Counted from the first letter of the stretch, positions 10,882 through 28,000 are shown. The stretch is DNA of 64,000 nucleotides from Diadema antillarum (GCF_040938485.1 NW_027271416.1:186001-250000), one strand, 5' to 3'. Numbers and translations are program-made. Notes: generated by a model from the sequence alone, not told the origin.

Positions 10882-11969
10882 TCAGTAAGGTACGACGAAG
10901 ACATAAGGATAGTCAAACATGTAGAATGGCGACGGGTTGTGGTAGAAACTCCCTTCACGGTAAGGCGATGGATACGAAGAAGTCGGTCGGCTGCTTCGGG
11001 AGAGGAAGTCTACAGACATCAAGGGATTGGTGGCGCCCTGCTGCCTTCGATGAGATGTCGTCTGCTGCAAACTCATGATGTCACGCTTCTCGTTGATGCG
11101 GAGAGTCGACCAGGAATCCAGTGATCGGCTGCTACGAGACAGGAAATCGACTGACATCGGTGAGTCGTCGATGGCGAACTTCTTGGGCTGCGGTGTGCTC
11201 TCCTGGTCGATGACGTCAGTTGTTGCAAAGTGTTTCCTCTTACGTAGGCAGTGGGTCTCACTTTCCGCAACACCGAGACGGTTGTCGATGGAAGGTGAGA
11301 AGGACTTGAGGAAGGATCGACGATGCCGTGAGCGACGGTTCTGAAACCAGACCTAGAAAGAAAATGAATAAAATATGACTATTAAGAAACAAACAAAACA
11401 ACAGTCTATCGTTCTATCCTAATACAAAGCCTGATCAATTCGGCCTCTTGAGACACTAGTTGCACAGCTTCGATTACAGTTTGTTTGTATAGAAACTGAA
11501 TCAATATTCATTCGGTAATAAGCAGGAAGAATATTGTTGACAATAAGAGGTTACTTTATTTGCTACTATAATTTCATACTTATTATGCTATTATACTGCT
11601 TCAAATAATTAAATTGGATATTTCATAGTAACAAACTCAGACTATAAGCAATGTTGATATATAGTGTCATTTAAACGCCAATTGAAATGATTTTAATTAG
11701 TTGATAACTTAAACATTGGTTGAGTACATCTTTTCATACCAGATTCTATGCCGTATATCTAATATGACAATGAAACCTACGTGTATTCTGTCTTCATTCA
11801 GACCCAGTGTAGCTGCCAGTTTCTTCCTGGAAACGATGTCGGGATACTGGTCGATGTCGAACTCGGCCTTCAGTCTCTCGAGTTGCCATTCGGTGAACCT
11901 AGTCTTACGTCGAGGACGAGGTCGCTTGGAAGGACCAGACATCGGGACGTGAAGCAACGAATCAGCCAT
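10882..11969 (-). CDS. pmar1: PRD-class Q50 homeobox repressor, pmar1/micro1 family, copy B (2 exons, 219 aa)
   Basis: Exon 1 is 11969-11781 (MADSLL...RPRRKTRFTEWQLERLKAEFDIDQYPDIVSRKKLAATLGLNEDRIH, donor GTAGGT). Exon 2 is 11352-10882 (acceptor ttctag; VWFQNRRSRHRRSF...MSVDFLSRSSR x2...VVPY*). Exon 2 has the same length (471 nt) as in copy A. Homeodomain identity to copy A is 47/60 by hand count. Confidence 0.9.
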
Positions 11970-12154
11970 GTTGGATAGCGATTTTAGCCTGGGAGATGTT
12001 TGAGGGATCGGTGACGGGTAATCGTGTTCGGATGTTCAGTCAGGTAAGAAGACAATTCGCTTGTGACTAGCTTCTATCCCAGTTGATTCCCGTCAGTAGT
12101 TTTCATTTCATGGAAAGCTACAATTCATTTCTGTGCTGCATGTATGGTATGGGA

Positions 12155-12195
12155 ATAGTTGATTGGTCAGACTATGCAACCAATGGGATTAACGG
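12155..12195 (-). promoter_or_regulatory. Proximal promoter module of pmar1 copy B (ATTGG..CCAAT..GGATTA)
   Basis: GATTGGTC...ACCAATGGGATTA about 190 bp upstream of the ATG, in the same order and at a similar distance as in copy A. Confidence 0.45.
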
Positions 12196-13016
12196 GATGG
12201 ACGAGGGGGTAGATCTATTTTGCTTTAAACAAAAGCATCCACCTCTGACCAGGCGTGGATGGTCATTAATTTGGCGGCAAAGATCAAACTGCTTATTTCA
12301 ACAATACATCGACAGTATAGCCTAAAAAGCTCGTGCGCGGTGCGTACGCTTTAATCATTGCTCCTTTCATTCCTTTTCATTTGTCACACTTTCCGCCTTT
12401 GTTCGTGCTACTTAGGAATGTACGGACCTGCCCTGCCTCCTTTTAATGGAAGTGTTATATGAGATGTGATTCAAGTTAGACTGAAGTTCCAAAGACTTTT
12501 ACGCTAATGAGAATGCGGAGTCTGTCAGTCAATGTCCATCTGTCAATCTCAATCTCATTCGAGACCCACTGTGTCGTCATGGGAAAGCGAAGTTGACGTT
12601 TAAACAGGATCTCATACGCTCTTACAATAAAACAGTGTATTACCCTCTGTCCGGATTATTTCAAAGAAGTATCTTTACGCTTCATAACAAATTGATACCC
12701 GTTCGGGCTTCATGATGTATAACTTTAAATGAAAATGAGAACTAATATTCCACTACCGTTTACTCTATTGGTATTTTTTTAAGGTAATTCAATGTTATGC
12801 ATGCTTTGTTCACAATAGTTGCCCTTTGCTTTGTTCACAAAGCTTGCCGAAGGCTAGCCTTACCTATAACAACATCCACTGACATTGCGTTAGAAACTTA
12901 CTACTGTAATACAATGACATGTAATACTGAGCTATACGGGGAAAAAAAAACATTCATGAAGGTCTAATACATTGCAGAAACGGTCTGTTTTTATGCCTGC
13001 TCCCGGGCACCATTGC

Positions 13017-13028
13017 GATGATGATTAC

Positions 13029-13066
<38 letters not shown>
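13017..13066. repeat. (GAT)n microsatellite
   Basis: Direct inspection. Confidence 0.9.
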
Positions 13067-13067
<1 letters not shown>

Positions 13068-14113
13068 CATTTATCTTATCTATCCGAAATAGCCGACATA
13101 TAGCCAAGATATCCCAGGAGAGTCTTCATCAATTTTTGGCACTTCGCTGAAGTAACAACAATGTCAGGTATAGGCCTATATCCATTCATCACCCAGGTGA
13201 CTCTTCAGTTACCTGCTTGCACAAGTCCATGATGGTGCGATTTCTTTGGAAGCATGTGTGGCAGTATGTATGGTAAAATAGATACCTTGACATCTCTTCT
13301 TCTTGCTCGTCTTCTTTTTTGTTCTTTCTCTTTTCTTTTTCTTTTTCTTTTTTTTTGGGGGGGGCACATCTATGACAGTGTTGTTAATTGCGTATACGGT
13401 ATACAGCTTGGACGACACGGATTGTCTTCTTGAATATGAATCGAATACATCTCTATCACATCGAACGATTATTCTCATACATTTTTTTATGGTCTACATT
13501 GAATCCTTCGATACAGTACCGTAAGGCCGCATATTTTCTGTTGTTGTTCCGTTAGCTAAAGAGTTGATGATCCTGTGTCAAATAATCTTTTATACTGAAA
13601 ATTCATATTGGTGGCTTTAGTTGAGCACCTTCTTTCATAGTCCCATTACACTTAATATAAAGGGGCATTTTTTTTCCTATGCTATTTTGTTATGAATTAT
13701 GGAATACATTTAGATTTTTTTTTCTTTAGAGGAAGACAGAGGTAAGCCATTTTCAGTCCAATCGAGTGTAAATATTCACATTTACACTTGGGTACACACA
13801 CACAACTGCACACACACATACACACACACACACACGAATGTATATATATATATCAATATCAGGCGCAGCAGAATTCTGCGTCATTTACAGATCAATGTCG
13901 ATAGATTATTTCAAAAGGATTTAAAAAAATGCCATAGAAATTTGTTTTGCATGTGTTGTTTTAATCAAGACAATACACACGTACTGTGCAAGTACACTAC
14001 CGTCATGAGTGTCTTAACAATTACAACAAAAAGTTGTAACTTCAATAAAGCAGGATAACTGAATTGGAAGTAGATCATAGATATTCATGTGCACAACATG
14101 GGAACCTCAAATC

Positions 14114-14185
14114 GAACCACTTTTTCAGCTACCTACGACCTTTTTGTACGAAGATTTCCGCAGATCGCGTCATAGAATGCAGTTC
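14114..14185 (-). other. SECIS element (type II) in the 3' UTR of the selenoprotein M gene
   Basis: Minus strand reads GAACUGC-AUUCU-AUGAC-GCGAUCUGCGG-AAA-UCUUCGUACAAAAAGG-UCGUAGGUAGC-UGAA-AAA-GUGGUUC. Helix I has 7 bp (GAACUGC/GUGGUUC). The core is AUGA...UGAA. Helix II has 11 bp with one mismatch. Unpaired AAA lies at 14157-14155 with an apical mini-stem CUU/AAG. It is about 1.1 kb downstream of the stop of a UGA-containing ORF. Confidence 0.85.
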
Positions 14186-14666
14186 ACATGAATATCAATG
14201 TTGTCCTTTCCAATTCGTGCTGTTGAGTGGTGAATCTTTATCTAACATCTTATACAATGATTTGTGTTCATTATCAAAGGAGAATATATTATACACATGT
14301 TATACAATGTTACACGTTGTATCACCGCATAGAATCCTGAGACATAGCAAATCGAGCAATGCTACGTTCAGAGACTGGTCGGGCAAGTTAGTGCAGTGTT
14401 GTGAGAACAGATTTTTGGAATGAAACTAAACGATACATAATCACTGTACGAACTAATAATTATTATTTTGAATCGATCTGGACCTGAAGGAGACGTCACC
14501 GAGGAAAATAATCCTATTACATCTATTAAAAAAGAACCTTAGTAGGGGACTTCAAATTTAGCTGCAAGTACTGTGACTTTGACCGCGGCTATATATCCTT
14601 TTTTTTATTATGTTTTTTAACGGAAATAAATATCGACCTACCTACCTATGTATATGGACAACTTAA

Positions 14667-15071
14667 AGGGATCGTATAGTTTTGGTTGAGACCTAACTTC
14701 AGGTTTCTAACATTTCTTTTTCTTGGGGGGGGGGGTGGAGTGAGATAATAAGAAACCTCACATGAAATGTTAAAAAAAAAATTAATTCCCAGAGGGATTC
14801 AACGTTTATTTGATGAAAATTGGTTTTGAAATGGCTGAGATATTCAAAACAGAGCGATCCGAACAAAAGCTGGGACCCGCCTTTTATTGCAATGTACAAT
14901 CGCTTTGTTTTACTTTGTTTTTGGATGTCTCAGACATTCCAAAACCAATTTTCATTGAATGAACGTTGAATTCCTCTTCGAACGGTATGCTCTGCGCTAT
15001 TTCATATGCGGTTTCTAAGTATCTCGCAACAAAAACCTTATCCTAATCTCCACCAATACTATACTATCCAT
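14667..15071. mobile_element. Non-autonomous DNA transposon with TTAA target duplication (Kolobok/piggyBac-like)
   Basis: TTAA|AGGGATCGTATAGTTTTGGT ... ACCAATACTATACTATCCAT|TTAA. A related copy lies at 25762-26168. Confidence 0.75.
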
Positions 15072-15283
15072 TTAACTTGGATGATGTACTAGAGTGGAGT
15101 TAGCAATGTGTCCATCGAAACCCTTTAGCTTGGGTGATGGTGTTAGCAATGTTTCCATCGAAATTATTCATTACGATTTGAACAGCTCAAGGTAACATAT
15201 CATCACAAGTCTTATTACAACGAGTCTTCTGTCACACAACTCCCTGCTTGGTCTCGTTCAGGTTTGATCTGGTGCCCAGTCTT

Positions 15284-17774
15284 CTACAGCTCATCTCTGT
15301 AAAAGTCTTCCTTTATCTTCTTTGACTTTTTAAAGCCATGCTTCTTCATGAGCCGTTTCAGTCCAGCGCGATCATATGGAGCCAAATCTATTCGCTGTTA
15401 ACCGAGAGAATGAATTCAAGAAACAAAGCACGAATGTCGGACTTGATGATCGATATTTTGTCTCAGCGAAAACATTATGTAATACAGGAAGTGTACGAGG
15501 AAATATATTATATTTAGTACTCCACATTGCATAGCCATAGGTCTGATTGAAATTTCTAATACAGTGCCATTAAAACAGAAAACATCAATGATGATGATTA
15601 TCAAGAGATATATATTAAGGCACGAAATAGTAAACAAATGCATAAACATGAAAGAAAATAAAACCCCAATCTAATTATTCTGACGTTTAATCCCATTTAG
15701 TGGTAGTGGTTTCTTTGTCCCAGTTTCCTATAGAGGAAGAATAGCATGAGTTCGTTGTGTTACAAAGGATGGTTCAGTCATTATGGTCTCATGACTTGTA
15801 GAAGACTTCCATGTTGGAACCTGCATGCTGTCTTGAATGTTTGGAAATTTGAAAACGAATCCCTAAAATGCAGAAGAGTTTGATGTATTCTGTTTAATGT
15901 GAAGTGATAGCGACCTGGCAGTTCTGCATAAAATCTGCTGACATAATACTAAGAAAAACAAACAAACAAATACACAAACCAACTAAACTAAACAAAACAT
16001 ATCGAAACAATTTATTACCTCAATCGTCTTTCCTTTAGCATCAAGAAGAAGCAAATCTGGATTAGCATGGGGGATGACTTCAAATGTGACATCATGACTG
16101 TGTGTGTATTAGAATTTAGGTTAAGATGAATCCATATTCTATCAATCTGAACAATGAGCAGCAATAATGTAATAAAAAAATGAAATGCAATTCTACTTAT
16201 TATACACATGTTACGCTATAGATTCTGTAATACCCACCGATGATGCAAATTCCACTTCATTGCAATGTCGTTATGTTCCAGTGCTCCTGATATATACGTA
16301 TCACCTGACTACAACTATATATATACAGTGAATTTTCTCTCCTTTTTTGAGTACTTTCCTGCCTGCCCTTTTGTTGCTTATATGCGGTATGTTGTTGTTG
16401 TTCAACATTCTTTATTACATGAATAAACAATGTGACATCAAACGCCTAGGTTGCTTCCTGGATTAAACAGGAGACCGTCAAAAGGTAAAGACAAAGGACA
16501 ATACATTATAACATGTAAATACATCTTACATACAAGACATACTCAACAAATACAATAATACATAATCACGAACAAATTGACAAACATACATTTATATATA
16601 CAAACGAATTAAAATATGCAATATTTTATTCTAAAGCATACATTTCTATCTTAATAATACAATTTTGTCTCATTCTTCTGTTTTTTTTGTGTCTTCTATT
16701 TCCCTCTCACTAAGTCATTCTCTTATATGTTTATGATTATAGCCATGATTATACACTCAGCAAAAAAAGTAAGTTCCCCCCTAACATTTTTGAATATATC
16801 TCAAAAAGTGTTGTACGGATTTTCATAATTCAAACGGAAATGGATAGGAAATTTCATTACTCATAACATGAATGGCATATTATTGCCACCAGATATCATT
16901 ATTGGTGTTAAAAAACGCATTTTATGTCAAAATGCATGGGGAAAAAGTTGCACTTTAGGCTATATGAAGCATATTGTATACATTTCCTATGTAAGTTTAA
17001 TAGCAAATGACCTTTTTAAATTGTGTAATTCTCAGGAATTTCTTCAGGTACAATGTGCTTCCCTAATAATCAGATGTTATGCATATTTTTTAAACAATAG
17101 CCTTTTCAATATGAAAATGTTGGGAGAAGCCATGTGATTTGTAATTCCAATTTGGGTTGATCACATTAATGTGCCTATGGCCATTTTGCATCCTGCGCTC
17201 AAGTTGTAGATCAGTTTGTTGAGGGAAATGGCATCGAACGTATGGAGTGGCCTACAAGATCCCCTGACTGTAATCCAGTAGAGAATCTTTGGGATATCAT
17301 TAAGCGGAAAGCAAGCAAGGAGGTGAAAAATGACACTTTACAGCAATAATTTCAGCGCATCTTGCAGAGAGCATGGGCCAACATTGAGCAGCGCCAAGTA
17401 CAAACTTCAGTTAACAGTTAACGGTGGACATATCAATTATCAAATACTTGACTGTATGCTCATGAAAAGAAAGAGATAGAAAAATATGCAATAAACCATT
17501 CTTAAATGTTCAGAATCATGATTGATTGTTTGATTATTTGTGTAAAAGTCACTGCAAATCACTAAAGTGCAACTTTTGTTTCCATGCATTTTGACATAAA
17601 ATGCATTTTTTCACACCAATAATAATATCTGGTGGCAATGATTTGCCACTCATGTTGTGAGTAATAAAATTCCTTATCCATTTCCGTTTGAATTATGAAA
17701 ATCGGTAAAATACATTTTGAGATATATCCAAAAATGTTAGGGGGGAACTTACTTTTTTTTGCTGAGTGTATATA

Positions 17775-17817
<43 letters not shown>

Positions 17818-20453
17818 TATATAATATGTCAAGACTTCTGAAGAAGGCGGAGGCCGTTCAAAATTTGAGTCGAATAAAACTAATTCTTTATTGGCAAAAA
17901 ATTGCATTACCAGTTTATTTCTTCATTATATAATGTATCATATATATTCATAAATCATGGCTCAGCAAAAACATTTTTCTCTAGTAACCCACTAACGGGA
18001 CACTAAAATCTTTGAATTTTGATTTTTGGGGAAATGAAAAAGAATTGTAGGGGCCTCAAAATAAAAAGAAATTTACAGATTTGATTTGAACGTCTTTGCC
18101 CAATTGTCCAACCAAACGATATCTTTTGAAAAATTGGTGGCCTGACATCAATANNNNNNNNNNNNNNNNNNNNNNNNNNNNNNNNNNNNNNNNNNNNNNN
18201 NNNNNNNNNNNNNNNNNNNNNNNNNNNNNNNNNNNNNNNNNNNNNNNNNNNNNNNNNNNNNNNNNNNNNNNNNNNNNNNNNNNNNNNNNNNNNNNNNNNN
18301 NNNNNNNNNNNNNNNNNNNNNNNNNNNNNNNNNNNNNNNNNNNNNNNNNNNNNNNNNNNNNNNNNNNNNNTACAAATTATCATTATCATTTATATTATTA
18401 TTATTATTATCATTATGTGCCTGCTGTGTATAAAGTCAGTAGCGCATAAGTCGAAGCTAATTCTCCAGTCCCACTGTACAGTGTATACAAAATGCAGAGT
18501 ATCAGACTAAACGTGAAAAAAAAAGATATACAGTGTAGAGTAAAAGAAATAGCCAACATCCCCTGAAAAAAAAGGATACTAATACGGCAGGTCTTCGAAG
18601 ATAAATGCCCTCACTTCGGGGAGGGAGTTCAGTTGTCATCCCTGGCAGCTCTGTGAAGGGGGAGAACAAGGAGATGGAGAGAGCTCCTTAGGTTGCGGTA
18701 CACTATTTCATCTGGCTCACTTCTTGTATTTCCTCATTTTCTTCAAGTGATCGCTGTGATCATTTCTATTATGACCCAAATTTTCAAAAGAATGTAAAAT
18801 TATACCAAATATTCGAATTCAGTCGAACAGAAACAGGACTAAGCATGCACGAATTTGACGAAACTTGCACACGCGCGTCAGCGTGGTTTCATCGTGTTGG
18901 TGATATATTATGTGTAACGCCAATGTATATAAGCAGGCGAAATTTTCACAGTCTGTGGACTAGATTTCAACTCTTCAATGTGTATTCAAAGCTATACATG
19001 ATTGTACTACTACATCATTGTACCTTTAACTGATGCAATGGAGTAAGTAAATATTGACAGAAGTATAAGTTGCCACAAACTAATCCGAGAATATTGTACA
19101 GGACGCGGGATTTGTTGTGGTATGAGGAGGGAATCTACGAGAATAGTAAGTCGAAAGTCGATAGGATTTGCGGAAAATAAAGGAAAAGCAGGAGATTTTT
19201 TAGTTCAACACTATAGCTCAGAAGAGATATAGTATCAACAACAAACTAGAGGATTAAACATCATGATTATTTTAGAACATGAACGCGATCTCCTTGATGT
19301 GCTGTGAACAGCAAAAACACGAAAAATGCACAATTAAACATATATACTTACGCTATAGATGTGGATATTTATGACAATTCATATTCACAAGATATTGTAG
19401 TATAAGCATCATAAGAATGGTTGACAATGGTTGATTAATCAATTGTTAGCCTATGGTACGTATTTTGCAACATTAATGTTTAAACACAGTAATGATGCAA
19501 GGGAGTACTAACACGGAAGCCTACAATATCAATTGATTCTTATTATTGATTGGCCCTTTATTACGTGTCTTGAGGGTGCAACAAACTCGTCATACAACAC
19601 GTGTGCAGCGTTTGCGCAGATGTGAGCAAGGTCATTGTAGATGAAGTCACCGTACAAAGGACAATGATTGGTGGTATTTCTGACACCTATTTGCTGTGCA
19701 CACGAGAGATGACATAAACACTTGGGCCTATTTACGTGCGTTGTTGCAATCGCATTTTCTGATAAATCGAGGGGAAAGTAAAAAAAAAATAGTGTCGGCA
19801 GCTGTTCTCAACAGATGTATCCATGTTGAGTTGAGATGACCTGTTTCATGACGTGTCCACTAACCACACTAAGCAAAAGAGCATGGAACGTAAATGTACA
19901 ATATACATTGAGTATATGCGACAATATCGTGGGAGCTTATTAGTGAACACTTTGAGGAAAATATTGGACAATCCCTTCAAAAGATATGACTTTTTTTTCA
20001 AGTGTTGCCATTGCTGGATGAGAAGGCTTGGTCAGATTGTGATGTCACACATTTATGGACAAGGACATAACGAAAGTTATTATCAAGAATGAAAAGCACA
20101 CATTCCCTACCGTTTTACTCTTCCCTACTAACAACAACATATTAAGGGTAATATTATAACCCCCTGTTTTCTTAAAGAGATAATTCAATAAGTACTTTTT
20201 CATTATTCTAGGAAAATTAGAATAGGCATTGAATCATCTTCATTAAAAAAAATAGTAAATGGTAAGGCAGATAAGCCGTTTTCATGAATAGTAAAACACA
20301 GACGCAGAGGAAAGAAGAATGCACGTGTCTCACCTCGATTCTGCCACTGACAATCTTTTTCTGTTCTGTCTTTCCCAAACCTGCAGACAGTACACCGACT
20401 GCCAAAAGTAAAATGCCGACTCCAGCACCAACGAAACAGCGCGAAAGCAGCAT
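15284..20453 (-). CDS. SELENOM: Selenoprotein M (Sep15/SelM thioredoxin-like family), 4 exons, 126 aa, Sec encoded by UGA at 18638-18636
   Basis: Exons 20453-20334, 18650-18580, 16097-16019 and 15394-15284, all GT-AG with phases 0/2/0. Translation: MLLSRCFVGAGVGILLLAVGVLSAGLGKTEQKKIVSGRIE-SCQGUQLNSLPEVRAFIFEDLPYY-HDVTFEVIPHANPDLLLLDAKGKTIE-RIDLAPYDRAGLKRLMKKHGFKKSKKIKEDFYRDEL*. It has a signal peptide, a CxxU redox motif, clear similarity to SelM (CGGUQLNRLKEVKAF..DIPFYHNL..HLPGADPELVLL), an RDEL ER-retention signal and a downstream SECIS. Confidence 0.93.
16754..17768 (+). mobile_element. Internally deleted Tc1/mariner element with TIRs of about 205 bp (in SELENOM intron 2)
   Basis: TA|CACTCAGCAAAAAAAGTAAGTTCCCCCC ... 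GGGGGGAACTTACTTTTTTTTGCTGAGTG|TA. TIRs span about 16754-16958 and 17562-17768. The internal remnant encodes WPTRSPDCNPVENLW (17248-17292), the Tc1 transposase WPxxSPDLNPIE motif, followed by stops. Confidence 0.92.
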
Positions 20454-21076
20454 GGTGCAACGGGCGGACCAGACCAAGTATTGAACCAACCTTCCCTCGA
20501 CAACGCCTGTGATGCAGTGAGATGTGTTTCGCTCTCGGTGGAAATCCCTGTCTGAATGCGTTACGAACAAACTGCAATCTTAACCCTCTCATGCGCCACT
20601 ACTTTCAAGCATCATCGGGACCTTCCACAGTCCAGTCGCCCGTGGTAATGACTGGGTTAAATAGCTTGCGAAGCAATGGCAGATCGCGAACAAAAGACAC
20701 GAGCGACAACAGATGCGTGAAACAAAAATATTGATCACACTTCCTTACAGCCGCGATCGAAATTTCTCAAATCACCAATAATTCTAGACCACTCGTTTGG
20801 TACATCGTATCATACTATCATTGGCTACATTTGTTTCGATTTTTTTTTTCAATGACTCACTTTACTTGCCACGCAAACAGTGACAAGGCTAACTCTTTAG
20901 GGATGCATTTAGTAGCTTTTATGTTTATACTTCAACAATAAAATTGTTTCATTATAGGCCGAGGTAGAGAAATCTGATGTAGACTCTACTCCGCAGCCGG
21001 CGCGACTGGCAATTCTATACTTTGTAAAAAGAGAACTAAAATGGTGGATCACGACGTCGACAGGAAACATGTCCTG

Positions 21077-25068: not shown

Positions 25069-28000
25069 TCAGTGAAAGTTGAAGTAGTGGTCAATGGCAG
25101 CTGAGAATGCAGCAAAGCCTGCACAACCAACAACTCCTGCCTTAAGCCCCGCTGAAAAAAAAAGAGAAGAAAACAAAGATGCAAGGAAGGGAAGAAAAAA
25201 AAAAGAAGCAATACGAGACAAAATTTTTACTGGGTTATTGTGTGCTAATTCAAATGATCAGTTGCAAGAAAAGATCATTTTCATGAATCAGTAAGTCTTT
25301 GCTAAAACACAACATTCTGTAATATCCATTAAAACCATTCATCATACATGAATATATTTTGAGTCACATTGGCATGAAGAATTTCCTGAGTAAACTCATC
25401 AAGAAAAAAAAAATCCATCCTCTTAACAAATATTTATGGCTTAATAATTGAGAGTTGTTTTTACTTTAGATATAATCATTAAGTAGCTTACCTCTGTATC
25501 CAATGAGACCTCCAGTGATACATCCAGCCATAGGACTATTCTTCCAATCACTCTGTCCACGATACTATCAAATGAGTAGACACAAGAGACAGACAGACAT
25601 GAAATGAAGTGAGTGAAAGACGCTGTGAACTTATCAAATTTCACTGCTTCAAAGGAATGTATGTGCGGAATGTATGTGATCAAGCACAATACAAGTTACA
25701 CAAACTTATTTCATCGAGTAAAGTATAATTCTTCTCACAAAATATTTCAAAATCAGCTTAAAGGGATAGTTATAGTTTTGGTTTAAATGGGGTTTCAGGT
25801 TTCCAACTGTCTTTGTGAGATAATGAGAAACCTCATATCTTCGGCTGAGAATGGTAAGGGCGTGAAGTTGCCACTTAAGCCAGTGTTCAAGGCACCTTAA
25901 CGCCCTTCTCATTCTCAGCCAACAATATGAAATATTATAGGGCATACAATTCTAGGAGGAATTAAAAAGTTTATTCAATAAAAATTGGTCTTGAAATGGC
26001 TGTTACTTTGCTTTTTCATATCTTAGCCATTTTAAAACTAATTTTCATCAAATAAACTCGGAATTCCTCATAGAATTGTATGCTCTTTAATATTTCATGA
26101 GTGGTTTCTAATTATCTCACAAAAACTTAAAATCTGAATCTCCATCTCAACCAAAACTATATATCTCTTTAATCATAGGCTCCAAGTCTAACATAGAGCA
26201 TGAAAGCATCACTATAATGAACAAGTAGGTTATCACAAAATATACTGATATCTGAAAAGAGATAAATGTTAGCTTATCAACAAGTTAGTTTTCATCCCGC
26301 AATTCATCACAGTCATCAAGTTAAGTACTACACTGCCTAATGCTGAGAGCACTGTTGCTTATACAAGCCTTCACTTCTTCATTTTTTGCTGCTAATATTT
26401 GCTAATGCAGCTACACTGTCATACTCACTGATTCCACTATGCACTCTGTGCCAGCAAACATAGCACCGATCAGGGCAAAGTTCTTGGCGTGGAAGAAACA
26501 CTGCTTGCCCATATCCTTGATGACATCCCGTGCCCTCTGCTTTGCTGCCAGCTCGGGGTCGATGGGATTGACGCTGGCTGCAAACAGTCCAATGGCCCCA
26601 CCAAGTCCAAAGCCTGTGATATAATAAACACAAACATATTTTCACTTTTGAAAGATGCAGAATTTTCCAATTTTCCAAAGAGCATACCTTTCTCATGACA
26701 ATGATAAATTCTTTATAATCTAAACACAGGTTGTTTCTTGGGTAACAGACTTACCAAGTGCAAATGGTGGGTACGTCACAACTGAAAGTTTTGTCTTCTA
26801 CAATGCACTATGCATACAGCCCCCTTTAGCAAATAATCATTGGGTAAACAAAGCTAGATTTCTACTAGTATTCTGAGTGTACTTGCTGATTTTCATGAGG
26901 GGGACTCCTGCTCATGAGGCCCTCAGGGCAAGATGTTCATGAGGCCCCCTGTTCACCTCTCATCATTCTCACATCTGACATATAATTTTGTTGCTAGTTC
27001 CCACAGTGATTTTTCGTATCACACATGTCCACTCTCCATGATGAAAACAATAAAAATCTGTCTGTGCTTTTTTGACAAAAATGGAGTTTTAATCAAGCGA
27101 TGTGCAGCGATCCACTGAAACATGGGTGCTACCAGGTATGTTCAATGCAGGGCTGCTGCACCTATCGGCCTGATCTGACTCAAAATTTTCAGCTGTGCAC
27201 AAAAAAGCATTTGCGTTTCTACGTATGTAAATGTTCAGCTTTACCCTAGTAACAGTAGCCGGTATAGCAAAATAGCTGGCGGTCTAATTTTGGACGGTGT
27301 TCTGGGCCCCATTTCATAAAAACTTGATATGATAGCAACTCTTGCAGGAATGGCAATTGTCATGACAACGACAAGAATCCAGCTTCCTGATTGGCTGTTG
27401 CTATCGGAAGTTGCCATTCCAGCAAGAGTTGCCATCCCAACATCTTTTATGAAATGGGGCCCTAGCCAAATTATGGGCAGCTTGACCTCTGTATATCATC
27501 TAGAAAAGCACTCAGAGAGTGCAGACCTCCGCTAAGTCAGCAACTCATTTCCATAGTTGGCATTTTAACATGCTGCAATTTCCCAATATAGAAGCCCTTG
27601 TTTATGTCATAAGCAGAGCACCCGCTTTAGATTTAGTGCATATGTAATCCTCCAAGATGCACAGCCAGAACTCCCAAATTCATTGACCTTTATTGAATAT
27701 CATATGCCAAAAGATCAAAAATTTCCTTTGAAAATCTATAAAAATTCCCTGATCACTACCAAAATCTAATCATCTGTTCCTCGTGCCATTATCAACTTTT
27801 CCTGCTTCATTTCTAGTTTCATTCAAATCCATTCAAAACTTTTTGAGTTATTTCACAAACAGACAAACCGATTGGCGATGATCACTAATTTTAACCTCCT
27901 CCTTCCTTCTGCTGGCCTTGGCGGAGGTAATTATCATCAATAATTTTTTATTGTCGTTTATTATCGACTTCTGACCGTGAGAAAGGAAAGCTCGGACACC

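What the first reader, a model, noticed from the sequence alone, without database searches (positions are those of the whole stretch)
14114..20453. Complete UGA-recoding system hidden from ORF callers: selenoprotein M with Sec codon and SECIS
Seen: an in-frame TGA (18638-18636) in a 71-nt exon, exactly at the U of the SelM CxxU motif, and a canonical SECIS hairpin in the 3' region on the same strand. Standard annotation would truncate the gene, skip the exon or miss it. The SECIS has the standard apical AAA, whereas mammalian SELENOM uses an atypical CC (established), which fits AA being the ancestral state.
Basis: partly seen in the sequence, partly recalled or inferred. Interest (0 to 1): 0.7.

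Follow-up and report, generated by a model that had tools for sequence, protein, structure and literature searches.

The report
Sea-urchin selenoprotein M gene with SECIS
This is an ordinary, apparently intact selenoprotein M gene of a sea urchin, with an in-frame UGA for selenocysteine and a plausible recoding hairpin 1.1 kb past the stop codon; it is an expected member of a well-known family.

Summary
On the minus strand, four coding exons (20453-20334, 18650-18580, 16097-16019, 15394-15284) encode about 126 residues. The protein has a hydrophobic signal peptide, a C-Q-G-[TGA] motif with TGA at 18638-18636, a Sep15/SelM redox domain and a C-terminal RDEL.

The only solved structure matching the TGA exon is mouse selenoprotein M (2A2P). 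The TGA falls on the Cys that replaces Sec in that construct.

The N gap (18154-18370) lies inside intron 2. Pfam profile coordinates run without a break across the exon 2/3 junction, so no coding exon is hidden there.

A SECIS-type hairpin sits at 14183-14116. It has a 7-bp helix I, an AUGA/GA core, a 10-pair helix II and AAA 12 nt after AUGA. It is the only SECIS hit in 11900-21000, but it scores 16.8 bits against Rfam's 35-bit threshold.

A second genomic copy (C85) has an identical TGA exon, only two synonymous coding changes, and a 166-nt block around the SECIS without any difference, amid 6-12% divergence.

No RNA runs were listed, so splicing and 3'UTR extent are untested. "AA is ancestral" is already published. 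The scan noted other selenoprotein genes in this genome (SelU, SelW), but not this locus.

The parts
20334..20453 (-). Coding exon 1 (ATG at 20453-20451; 40 codons; signal-peptide-like N-terminus), donor GT at 20333
   Evidence: Hydropathy peak over residues 6-17. Identical in the second copy C85.
18580..18650 (-). Coding exon 2, 71 nt, C-Q-G-U redox motif. An alternative in-frame donor at 18585 would give 65 nt.
   Evidence: Pfam PF08806 profile 5-25, 17.3 bits. The only PDB hit is 2A2P selenoprotein M. 120/120 identical in C85.
18636..18638 (-). In-frame TGA read as selenocysteine codon
   Evidence: It aligns with the Cys standing in for Sec in 2A2P and is present in both genomic copies.
18154..18370 (.). 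Assembly gap (N) inside intron 2; not coding
   Evidence: Pfam coordinates are contiguous across the exon 2/3 junction. The letters were neither filled nor looked up.
16762..17759 (+). Degenerate Tc1/mariner-type element with 185-nt terminal inverted repeats, inserted in intron 2
   Evidence: inverted repeat, 90% complementary. (DDE_3 remnant, 26.2 bits). The alignment to copy C85 starts only at 16753.
16019..16097 (-). Coding exon 3 (79 nt; its first base completes a split Tyr codon)
   Evidence: Pfam PF08806 profile 29-54, 14 bits. Identical in C85.
15284..15394 (-). Coding exon 4, ends R-D-E-L then TAG (15286-15284)
   Evidence: Two differences from C85, both synonymous.
14184..15283 (-). 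Presumed 3'UTR between stop codon and SECIS (inferred, no RNA evidence); holds three AATAAA hexamers (14888, 14810, 14609)
   Evidence: No RNA run was listed.
14663..15075 (.). About 410-bp interspersed MITE-like repeat inside the presumed 3'UTR
   Evidence: 9502 first-look candidates genome-wide, about 80% identity. (64-nt inverted arms). Spurious miRNA-family hits.
14116..14183 (-). SECIS element, form 2-like: 7-bp helix I, AUGA/GA core, helix II with 10 pairs and one G-A mismatch, AAA 12 nt after AUGA, 3-bp apical mini-helix
14060..14225 (-). 166-nt block with no difference between the two genomic copies, enclosing the SECIS
13960..13965 (-). ATTAAA, the first poly(A)-signal-like hexamer downstream of the SECIS (candidate only)
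   Evidence: Divergence between the copies rises sharply below 14050.

Best explanation
The locus is the selenoprotein M (SELENOM) gene of a sea urchin, probably Diadema antillarum. A four-exon mRNA would encode an ER-targeted, thioredoxin-like protein of about 126 residues. Its active-site motif C-Q-G-U has selenocysteine encoded by UGA. During translation, the hairpin at 14183-14116 in the 3'UTR would act as the SECIS: it would be bound through its AUGA/GA kink-turn core by SBP2, which recruits eEFSec and Sec-tRNA(Sec) so that the UGA in exon 2 is decoded instead of terminating. Shown here: the exon structure, the family assignment, the position of the TGA, the SECIS motifs and pairing, their preservation in a second genomic copy, and the presence of tRNA-Sec in the genome. 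Inferred: the splicing, a 3'UTR reaching the SECIS, ER residence, and actual Sec insertion.
For: Gene and protein:
- PF08806 Sep15_SelM is the only Pfam family hit. Exon 2 matches profile 5-25 at 17.3 bits and exon 3 matches 29-54 at 14.0 bits. The three residues P-Y-Y fill profile positions 26-28.
- The only PDB match of exon 2 is mouse selenoprotein M 2A2P (E 0.0072), with the X on the Sec-to-Cys position.
- The N-terminus is hydrophobic and the C-terminus is RDEL.

SECIS:
- SECIS_1 is the only Rfam family matching 14080-14220.
- It is the only SECIS hit in 13700-15300, 11900-13720 and 13000-21000.
- Rescaling one search's E-value to one family, one strand and the 1.17 kb after the stop gives about 7e-4 (my arithmetic).
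- My own scanner gives 1 hit in the window against 0.17 per shuffled window, and 0 of 60 shuffles reach the same quality.
- The energy of the SECIS-type structure is -14.2 kcal/mol.

Second copy on C85:
- Exons 1-3 are identical, exon 4 has 2 synonymous changes, and the SECIS block has 0 differences in 166 nt.
- Introns and flanks differ by 6-12%.

Genome:
- It holds tRNA-Sec with anticodon TCA.
- It holds a separate Sep15 gene with a 37.4-bit SECIS.
Against: - The SECIS scores only 16.8 bits against Rfam's 35-bit gathering score, while the Sep15 SECIS of the same genome passes at 37.4.
- The unconstrained MFE fold of the region is no more stable than shuffles (z -0.55).
- Three AATAAA hexamers and a 410-bp repeat lie between the stop codon and the SECIS, so some or all transcripts could end before it.
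- No RNA run was listed, so no junction or transcript end is verified.
- Each exon alone scores below Pfam's 26-bit cut-off. Exons 1 and 4 give no Pfam hit, and exons 3 and 4 give no PDB hit.
- Both donors available to exon 2 are weak.
Confidence: 0.85

Rival explanations
1. The SelM gene is real, but the hairpin at 14183-14116 is a chance look-alike. The working SECIS would lie elsewhere, for example in a further 3'UTR exon or in a form the scans missed.
For: The Rfam score is sub-threshold (16.8 against 35) and the MFE z-score is unremarkable. AATAAA signals lie upstream of the hairpin. The 3'UTRs of some selenoprotein genes are split by introns (PMC3316567).
Against: No other SECIS-family hit appears on either strand in 11900-21000. 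The scanner's chance expectation is about 0.002 in the 3' region. The hairpin sits in a 166-nt block that is identical between copies differing by 6-12% elsewhere.
Confidence: 0.08
2. The gene is a decaying pseudogene, or a Cys-type homologue that recently acquired a nonsense TGA, and makes no selenoprotein.
For: There is no expression evidence. Transposon insertions lie in intron 2 and in the 3' region.
Against: The TGA is exactly at the Sec position of SelM and is present in both copies. There are no nonsynonymous differences and no frame disruption across 381 nt, while non-coding DNA differs by 6-12%. A matching SECIS is present.
Confidence: 0.03
3. The gene model is a scaffolding artefact: the N gap joins exons 1-2 of one copy to exons 3-4 of another place.
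For: An assembly gap of estimated length lies between exon 2 and exon 3. The assembly holds many duplicated contigs (preprint 10.64898/2026.05.24.727502).
Against: Order, orientation, codon phase and Pfam profile coordinates fit across the junction. On contig C85 the same four exons lie in the same order and orientation, with exons 2 and 3 about 1.37 kb apart. This rests on match coordinates only.
Confidence: 0.03

Closest known systems
Mammalian selenoprotein M (SELENOM; mouse structure PDB 2A2P)
   Same: It shares the CxxU redox motif with Sec at the aligned position, with 13 of 21 residues identical around it. It has the Sep15/SelM thioredoxin-like domain, is a small protein with an N-terminal signal peptide, and ends in a C-terminal ER-retrieval-type tetrapeptide. 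A SECIS lies in the 3' region.
   Different: The apical unpaired bases are AAA here, whereas placental mammals have CC (PMC3316567). There are four coding exons here; I recall five in human and did not test this. The protein is about 126 residues. The C-terminus is RDEL. The SECIS lies 1.1 kb past the stop, with a repeat element in between.
Sep15 / SELENOF (paralogous family; a copy is present in this genome at L001)
   Same: It carries the same Pfam domain PF08806 and is likewise a Sec-containing ER protein with a 3' SECIS.
   Different: Sep15 has CxU rather than CxxU and an N-terminal Cys-rich UGGT-binding domain (established knowledge). The protein here has CQGU and no such domain. The genome's Sep15 gene is elsewhere, on contigs C835 and C711.
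Eukaryotic SECIS element, Rfam RF00031, form 2
   Same: It has helix I, an internal loop, the AUGA/GA quartet, helix II, unpaired AAA 12 nt from the core, and a short apical helix.
   Different: It scores 16.8 bits, below the 35-bit gathering score. Helix II has three G-U pairs and a G-A mismatch. The base after the 3' GA is A, where the Rfam consensus has U. The apical loop is longer than the consensus.

Membership tests
Selenoprotein M (SELENOM) | Sep15/SelM thioredoxin-like redox domain (Pfam PF08806) | tested here: met
   Tested exon by exon. Exon 2 gives 17.3 bits on profile 5-25 and exon 3 gives 14.0 bits on profile 29-54. The coordinates are contiguous, it is the only family hit, and the rough sum of 31 bits exceeds the 26-bit cut-off. 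The whole-protein score was not computed because the joined step was left out.
Selenoprotein M (SELENOM) | CxxU motif with Sec encoded by in-frame TGA at the SelM active-site position | tested here: met
   C-Q-G-TGA. The X aligns with the Sec-to-Cys position of 2A2P.
Selenoprotein M (SELENOM) | N-terminal signal peptide and C-terminal ER-retention-type tetrapeptide | tested here: met
   Hydrophobic core over residues 6-17 after a basic residue. The C-terminus RDEL fits the KDEL-type pattern, which I recall from PROSITE. No SignalP-type tool was available.
Selenoprotein M (SELENOM) | Lacks the Cys-rich UGGT-binding domain that defines Sep15 | tested here: met
   Only 40 residues precede the redox exon, and their single Cys lies in the signal peptide. 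A separate Sep15 gene exists in the genome.
Eukaryotic SECIS (RF00031) | AUGA / GA non-Watson-Crick core flanked by helix I and helix II, with unpaired AA 10-13 nt after the core | tested here: met
   helix I of 7 bp, helix II with 10 of 11 pairs, AAA after 12 nt.
Eukaryotic SECIS (RF00031) | Score at or above Rfam's gathering threshold | tested here: not met
   16.8 bits against 35. The Sep15 SECIS of the same genome scores 37.4.
Eukaryotic SECIS (RF00031) | [quoted passage not shown] | not testable with these tools
   No RNA run was listed, so read laying could not be used.
Eukaryotic SECIS (RF00031) | Supports Sec insertion at UGA | not testable with these tools
   This needs a reporter assay or 75Se labelling.

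The most novel reading that the evidence does not exclude
The 3'UTR of this SelM gene is a site of ongoing MITE insertion: one copy lies between the stop and the SECIS here, and a second sits just upstream of the SECIS in the other genomic copy. The AATAAA hexamers carried by the repeat could produce SECIS-less transcripts. If so, alternative polyadenylation, differing between alleles, would tune how much full-length selenoprotein M is made as opposed to truncated product or decayed mRNA.
Probability: 0.08. Interest if true: 0.35.

Novelty: new member of a known kind. Interest (0 to 1): 0.15.

Why it matters
The value is mainly practical. Automatic annotation of this new sea-urchin assembly is likely to truncate or miss the gene, because selenoproteins are often misannotated (PMC13134290), and this report gives exact exon, Sec-codon and SECIS coordinates. 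It also adds an echinoderm outgroup showing AA(A) in the SelM SECIS. That agrees with the published view that the CC form arose in placental mammals (PMC3316567). It opens no new question.

Tried and rejected
- **Rfam at 8-kb scale** listed no SECIS. This was an E-value scaling effect: the same 16.8-bit hit appears in narrower scans.
- **Unconstrained folding** gave z -0.55. The energy model ignores the kink-turn pairs, so I evaluated the SECIS-type structure directly.
- **Pfam** on exons 1 and 4, and **PDB searches** with exons 3 and 4, found nothing.
- **The genome-wide PF08806 scan** returned the Sep15 gene and noise but not this locus, whose exons are too short to score.
- **The genome-wide SECIS_1 scan** scored only 130 of about 48,000 candidates. 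It did not list this element, nor the Sep15 one, so it says little.
- **Reads.** The look-up of sequencing runs listed no RNA run.
- **A looser version of my scanner** flagged two further sites, 13372-13421 on the plus strand and 25345-25288 on the minus strand. The first is on the wrong strand and Rfam does not call it. The second is upstream of the gene. I take both as chance.
- The large protein searches were not run because the family scans settled the protein. The gap letters were neither filled nor looked up: for contig C85 I used only match coordinates for the exon 2 to exon 3 interval, and I fetched only the exon 1 and exon 2 stretches and the region from window 16753 downward.

Full report
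**The observation.** Read on the minus strand, the region holds four coding exons with standard AG/GT borders.
- Exon 1 is 20453-20334, 40 codons starting at ATG.
- Exon 2 is 18650-18580, 71 nt. It reads S-C-Q-G-stop-Q-L-N-S-L-P-E-V-R-A-F-I-F-E-D-L-P-Y, with TGA at 18638-18636.
- Exon 3 is 16097-16019. Its first base completes a split Tyr codon, followed by 26 codons.
- Exon 4 is 15394-15284, 36 codons ending R-D-E-L and then TAG.

A second GT six bases upstream (18585) would give an in-frame 65-nt exon lacking two residues. Homology favours 71 nt, as shown below. I see three coding introns, not four junctions. A further intron in an untranslated region cannot be judged without RNA.

**The gap.** The N run 18154-18370 lies inside intron 2, 209 nt after the exon 2 donor and 2056 nt before the exon 3 acceptor.
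- The coding sequence is continuous across it. Exon 2 matches Pfam PF08806 at profile positions 5-25 and exon 3 at 29-54. The three residues P-Y-Y at the junction fill positions 26-28, so no exon is hidden in the gap.
- The 71-nt exon fits this count and the 65-nt alternative does not.
- On a second contig of the same assembly (C85), the same exons lie in the same order and orientation, with exons 2 and 3 about 1.37 kb apart. This rests on match coordinates only.
- I did not read, fill or look up the letters that correspond to the gap.

**The protein.**
- PF08806 (Sep15/SelM redox domain) is the only Pfam family hit by any exon, at 17.3 and 14.0 bits. Each is below the 26-bit cut-off alone, and the rough sum is above it.
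- With X at the stop, exon 2 has a single match among all solved structures: mouse selenoprotein M, 2A2P (E 0.0072). The X falls on the Cys that replaces Sec in that construct.
- C-x-x-U is the SelM form of the motif, whereas Sep15 has C-x-U (established knowledge).
- The 40 N-terminal residues are a basic residue followed by a strongly hydrophobic stretch, not a Cys-rich domain. RDEL is a KDEL-type ER-retrieval ending.
- The genome has a separate Sep15 gene on contigs C835 and C711.
- The spliced protein was never joined. Each exon was searched by reference, or for exon 2 as 23 typed letters with X at the stop. No whole-protein score or fold was made.

**The SECIS.**
- *Structure.* By hand and by Rfam's alignment, 14183-14116 forms the following, from base to apex:
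  - a 7-bp helix I;
  - an internal loop of 5 and 4 nt;
  - the AUGA / GA core;
  - a helix II with 10 standard pairs, three of them G-U, and one G-A mismatch;
  - AAA beginning 12 nt after AUGA;
  - a 3-bp apical mini-helix, which makes it form 2-like.
- *Score.* Rfam SECIS_1 aligns the full model 1-64 but gives only 16.8 bits against a gathering score of 35. As a positive control, the Sep15 gene of the same genome has a SECIS_1 match of 37.4 bits about 900 nt after its last coding exon. This element is therefore a weak scorer, not a textbook one.
- *Significance in context.*
  - It is the only SECIS-family hit on either strand in 13700-15300, 11900-13720 and 13000-21000.
  - Rescaling one search's E-value to one family, one strand and the 1.17 kb after the stop gives roughly 7e-4 (my arithmetic).
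  - My own scanner tests ATGA, AA at 10-13 nt, GA, at most one mismatch in helix II and at least 5 bp in helix I. It finds this site alone in the 64-kb window on both strands.
  - Sixty dinucleotide shuffles averaged 0.17 hits each, and none matched its quality.
- *Stability.* The unconstrained MFE is no better than shuffles (z -0.55). The SECIS-type structure evaluates to -14.2 kcal/mol without credit for the non-Watson-Crick core.

**The second copy.** Contig C85 carries a second copy of the locus. It is either an allelic haplotig or a recent duplicate: the assembly preprint reports about 66% duplicated contigs.
- Non-coding DNA differs by 6-12%.
- Exons 1, 2 and 3 are identical, and exon 4 differs at two synonymous sites.
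- A 166-nt run without any difference (14225-14060) encloses the SECIS. The whole stretch 14600-14051 has only about eight differences, and divergence rises sharply below 14050.
- This pattern fits purifying selection on the coding sequence and on the distal 3'UTR. With only two sequences it is suggestive and cannot show covariation.

**Genome context.**
- The genome encodes tRNA-Sec with anticodon TCA (79.4 bits).
- Earlier notes of this scan describe SelU and SelW genes in the same genome.
- The organism is probably the sea urchin Diadema antillarum. I did not verify this independently.

**Weak points.**
- No RNA run was listed for the 3' region, so no reads could be laid. Splice junctions, the choice between the 71-nt and 65-nt donors, and the reach of the 3'UTR are all inferred.
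- A roughly 410-bp interspersed repeat (15075-14663, thousands of copies) and three AATAAA hexamers (14888, 14810, 14609) lie between the stop and the SECIS. The first poly(A)-like hexamer after the SECIS is ATTAAA at 13965-13960.
- In the C85 copy, a further copy of the same repeat is inserted at about 14255, just upstream of the conserved SECIS block.

**Comparison with what is known.**
- SelM is present in all vertebrates except lampreys (PMC3316567; PMC13134290).
- It is also present in sponge, sea anemone, annelid and amphioxus (PMC3473315). An echinoid orthologue is therefore expected.
- The CC form of the SelM SECIS is confined to placental mammals, and all other vertebrates have AA (PMC3316567).
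- Misannotation of selenoproteins is a recognised general problem (PMC13134290).

**Verdict.** This is a real and apparently intact SelM gene with its Sec codon and a probable SECIS. It is an ordinary new member of a known family, and its use is in annotation. My confidence in the gene is about 0.95, in this hairpin being the working SECIS about 0.85, and in the whole model about 0.85.

Noticed in passing
window 16762-17759: A degenerate Tc1/mariner-type transposon lies in intron 2. It has 185-nt terminal inverted repeats (90% complementary) and a 35-aa DDE_3 remnant at 17242-17346 on the plus strand. It appears absent from the second genomic copy, whose alignment starts only at 16753.
   Followed up: partly
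window 14663-15075: A roughly 410-bp interspersed MITE-like repeat with 64-nt inverted arms has thousands of copies in the genome at about 80% identity. It produces spurious plant and animal miRNA-family hits in Rfam (MIR8562, MIR9563).
   Followed up: partly
L008:2629-3021 (contig C85), corresponding to window about 14250-14260: The second genomic copy carries an extra copy of the same repeat family, inserted just upstream of the conserved SECIS block. This is an insertion polymorphism, or a paralogue difference, in the presumed 3'UTR.
   Followed up: partly
L001:2524-2585 (contig C835): The Sep15/SELENOF gene of the same genome has a strong SECIS_1 match (37.4 bits, above the gathering score) about 900 nt after its last coding exon. 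An identical-scoring copy of the coding exon lies on C711.
   Followed up: partly
L013:1500-1586 (contig C161), and C753: A tRNA-Sec gene with anticodon TCA (Rfam 79.4 bits) is present in two identical-scoring copies.
   Followed up: yes
window 13372-13421 (+) and 25288-25345 (-): A looser version of my scanner flagged these two SECIS-like pattern matches. The first is on the wrong strand for SelM and Rfam does not call it. I take both as chance.
   Followed up: partly
window 20487-20498: There is a 12-bp indel between the two genomic copies, 34 nt upstream of the SelM start codon, in a 5' region that otherwise differs at only one base.
   Followed up: no
genome-wide: Many of the hits in the genome-wide searches come in equal-scoring pairs on different contigs. 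This fits uncollapsed haplotypes, or the large-scale duplication that the assembly preprint reports.
   Followed up: no
window 17766-17832, 13789-13857, 13020-13065: These are simple repeats: (AT)n in intron 2, (TG)n downstream of the gene, and a (GAT)n/(ATC)n run.
   Followed up: no
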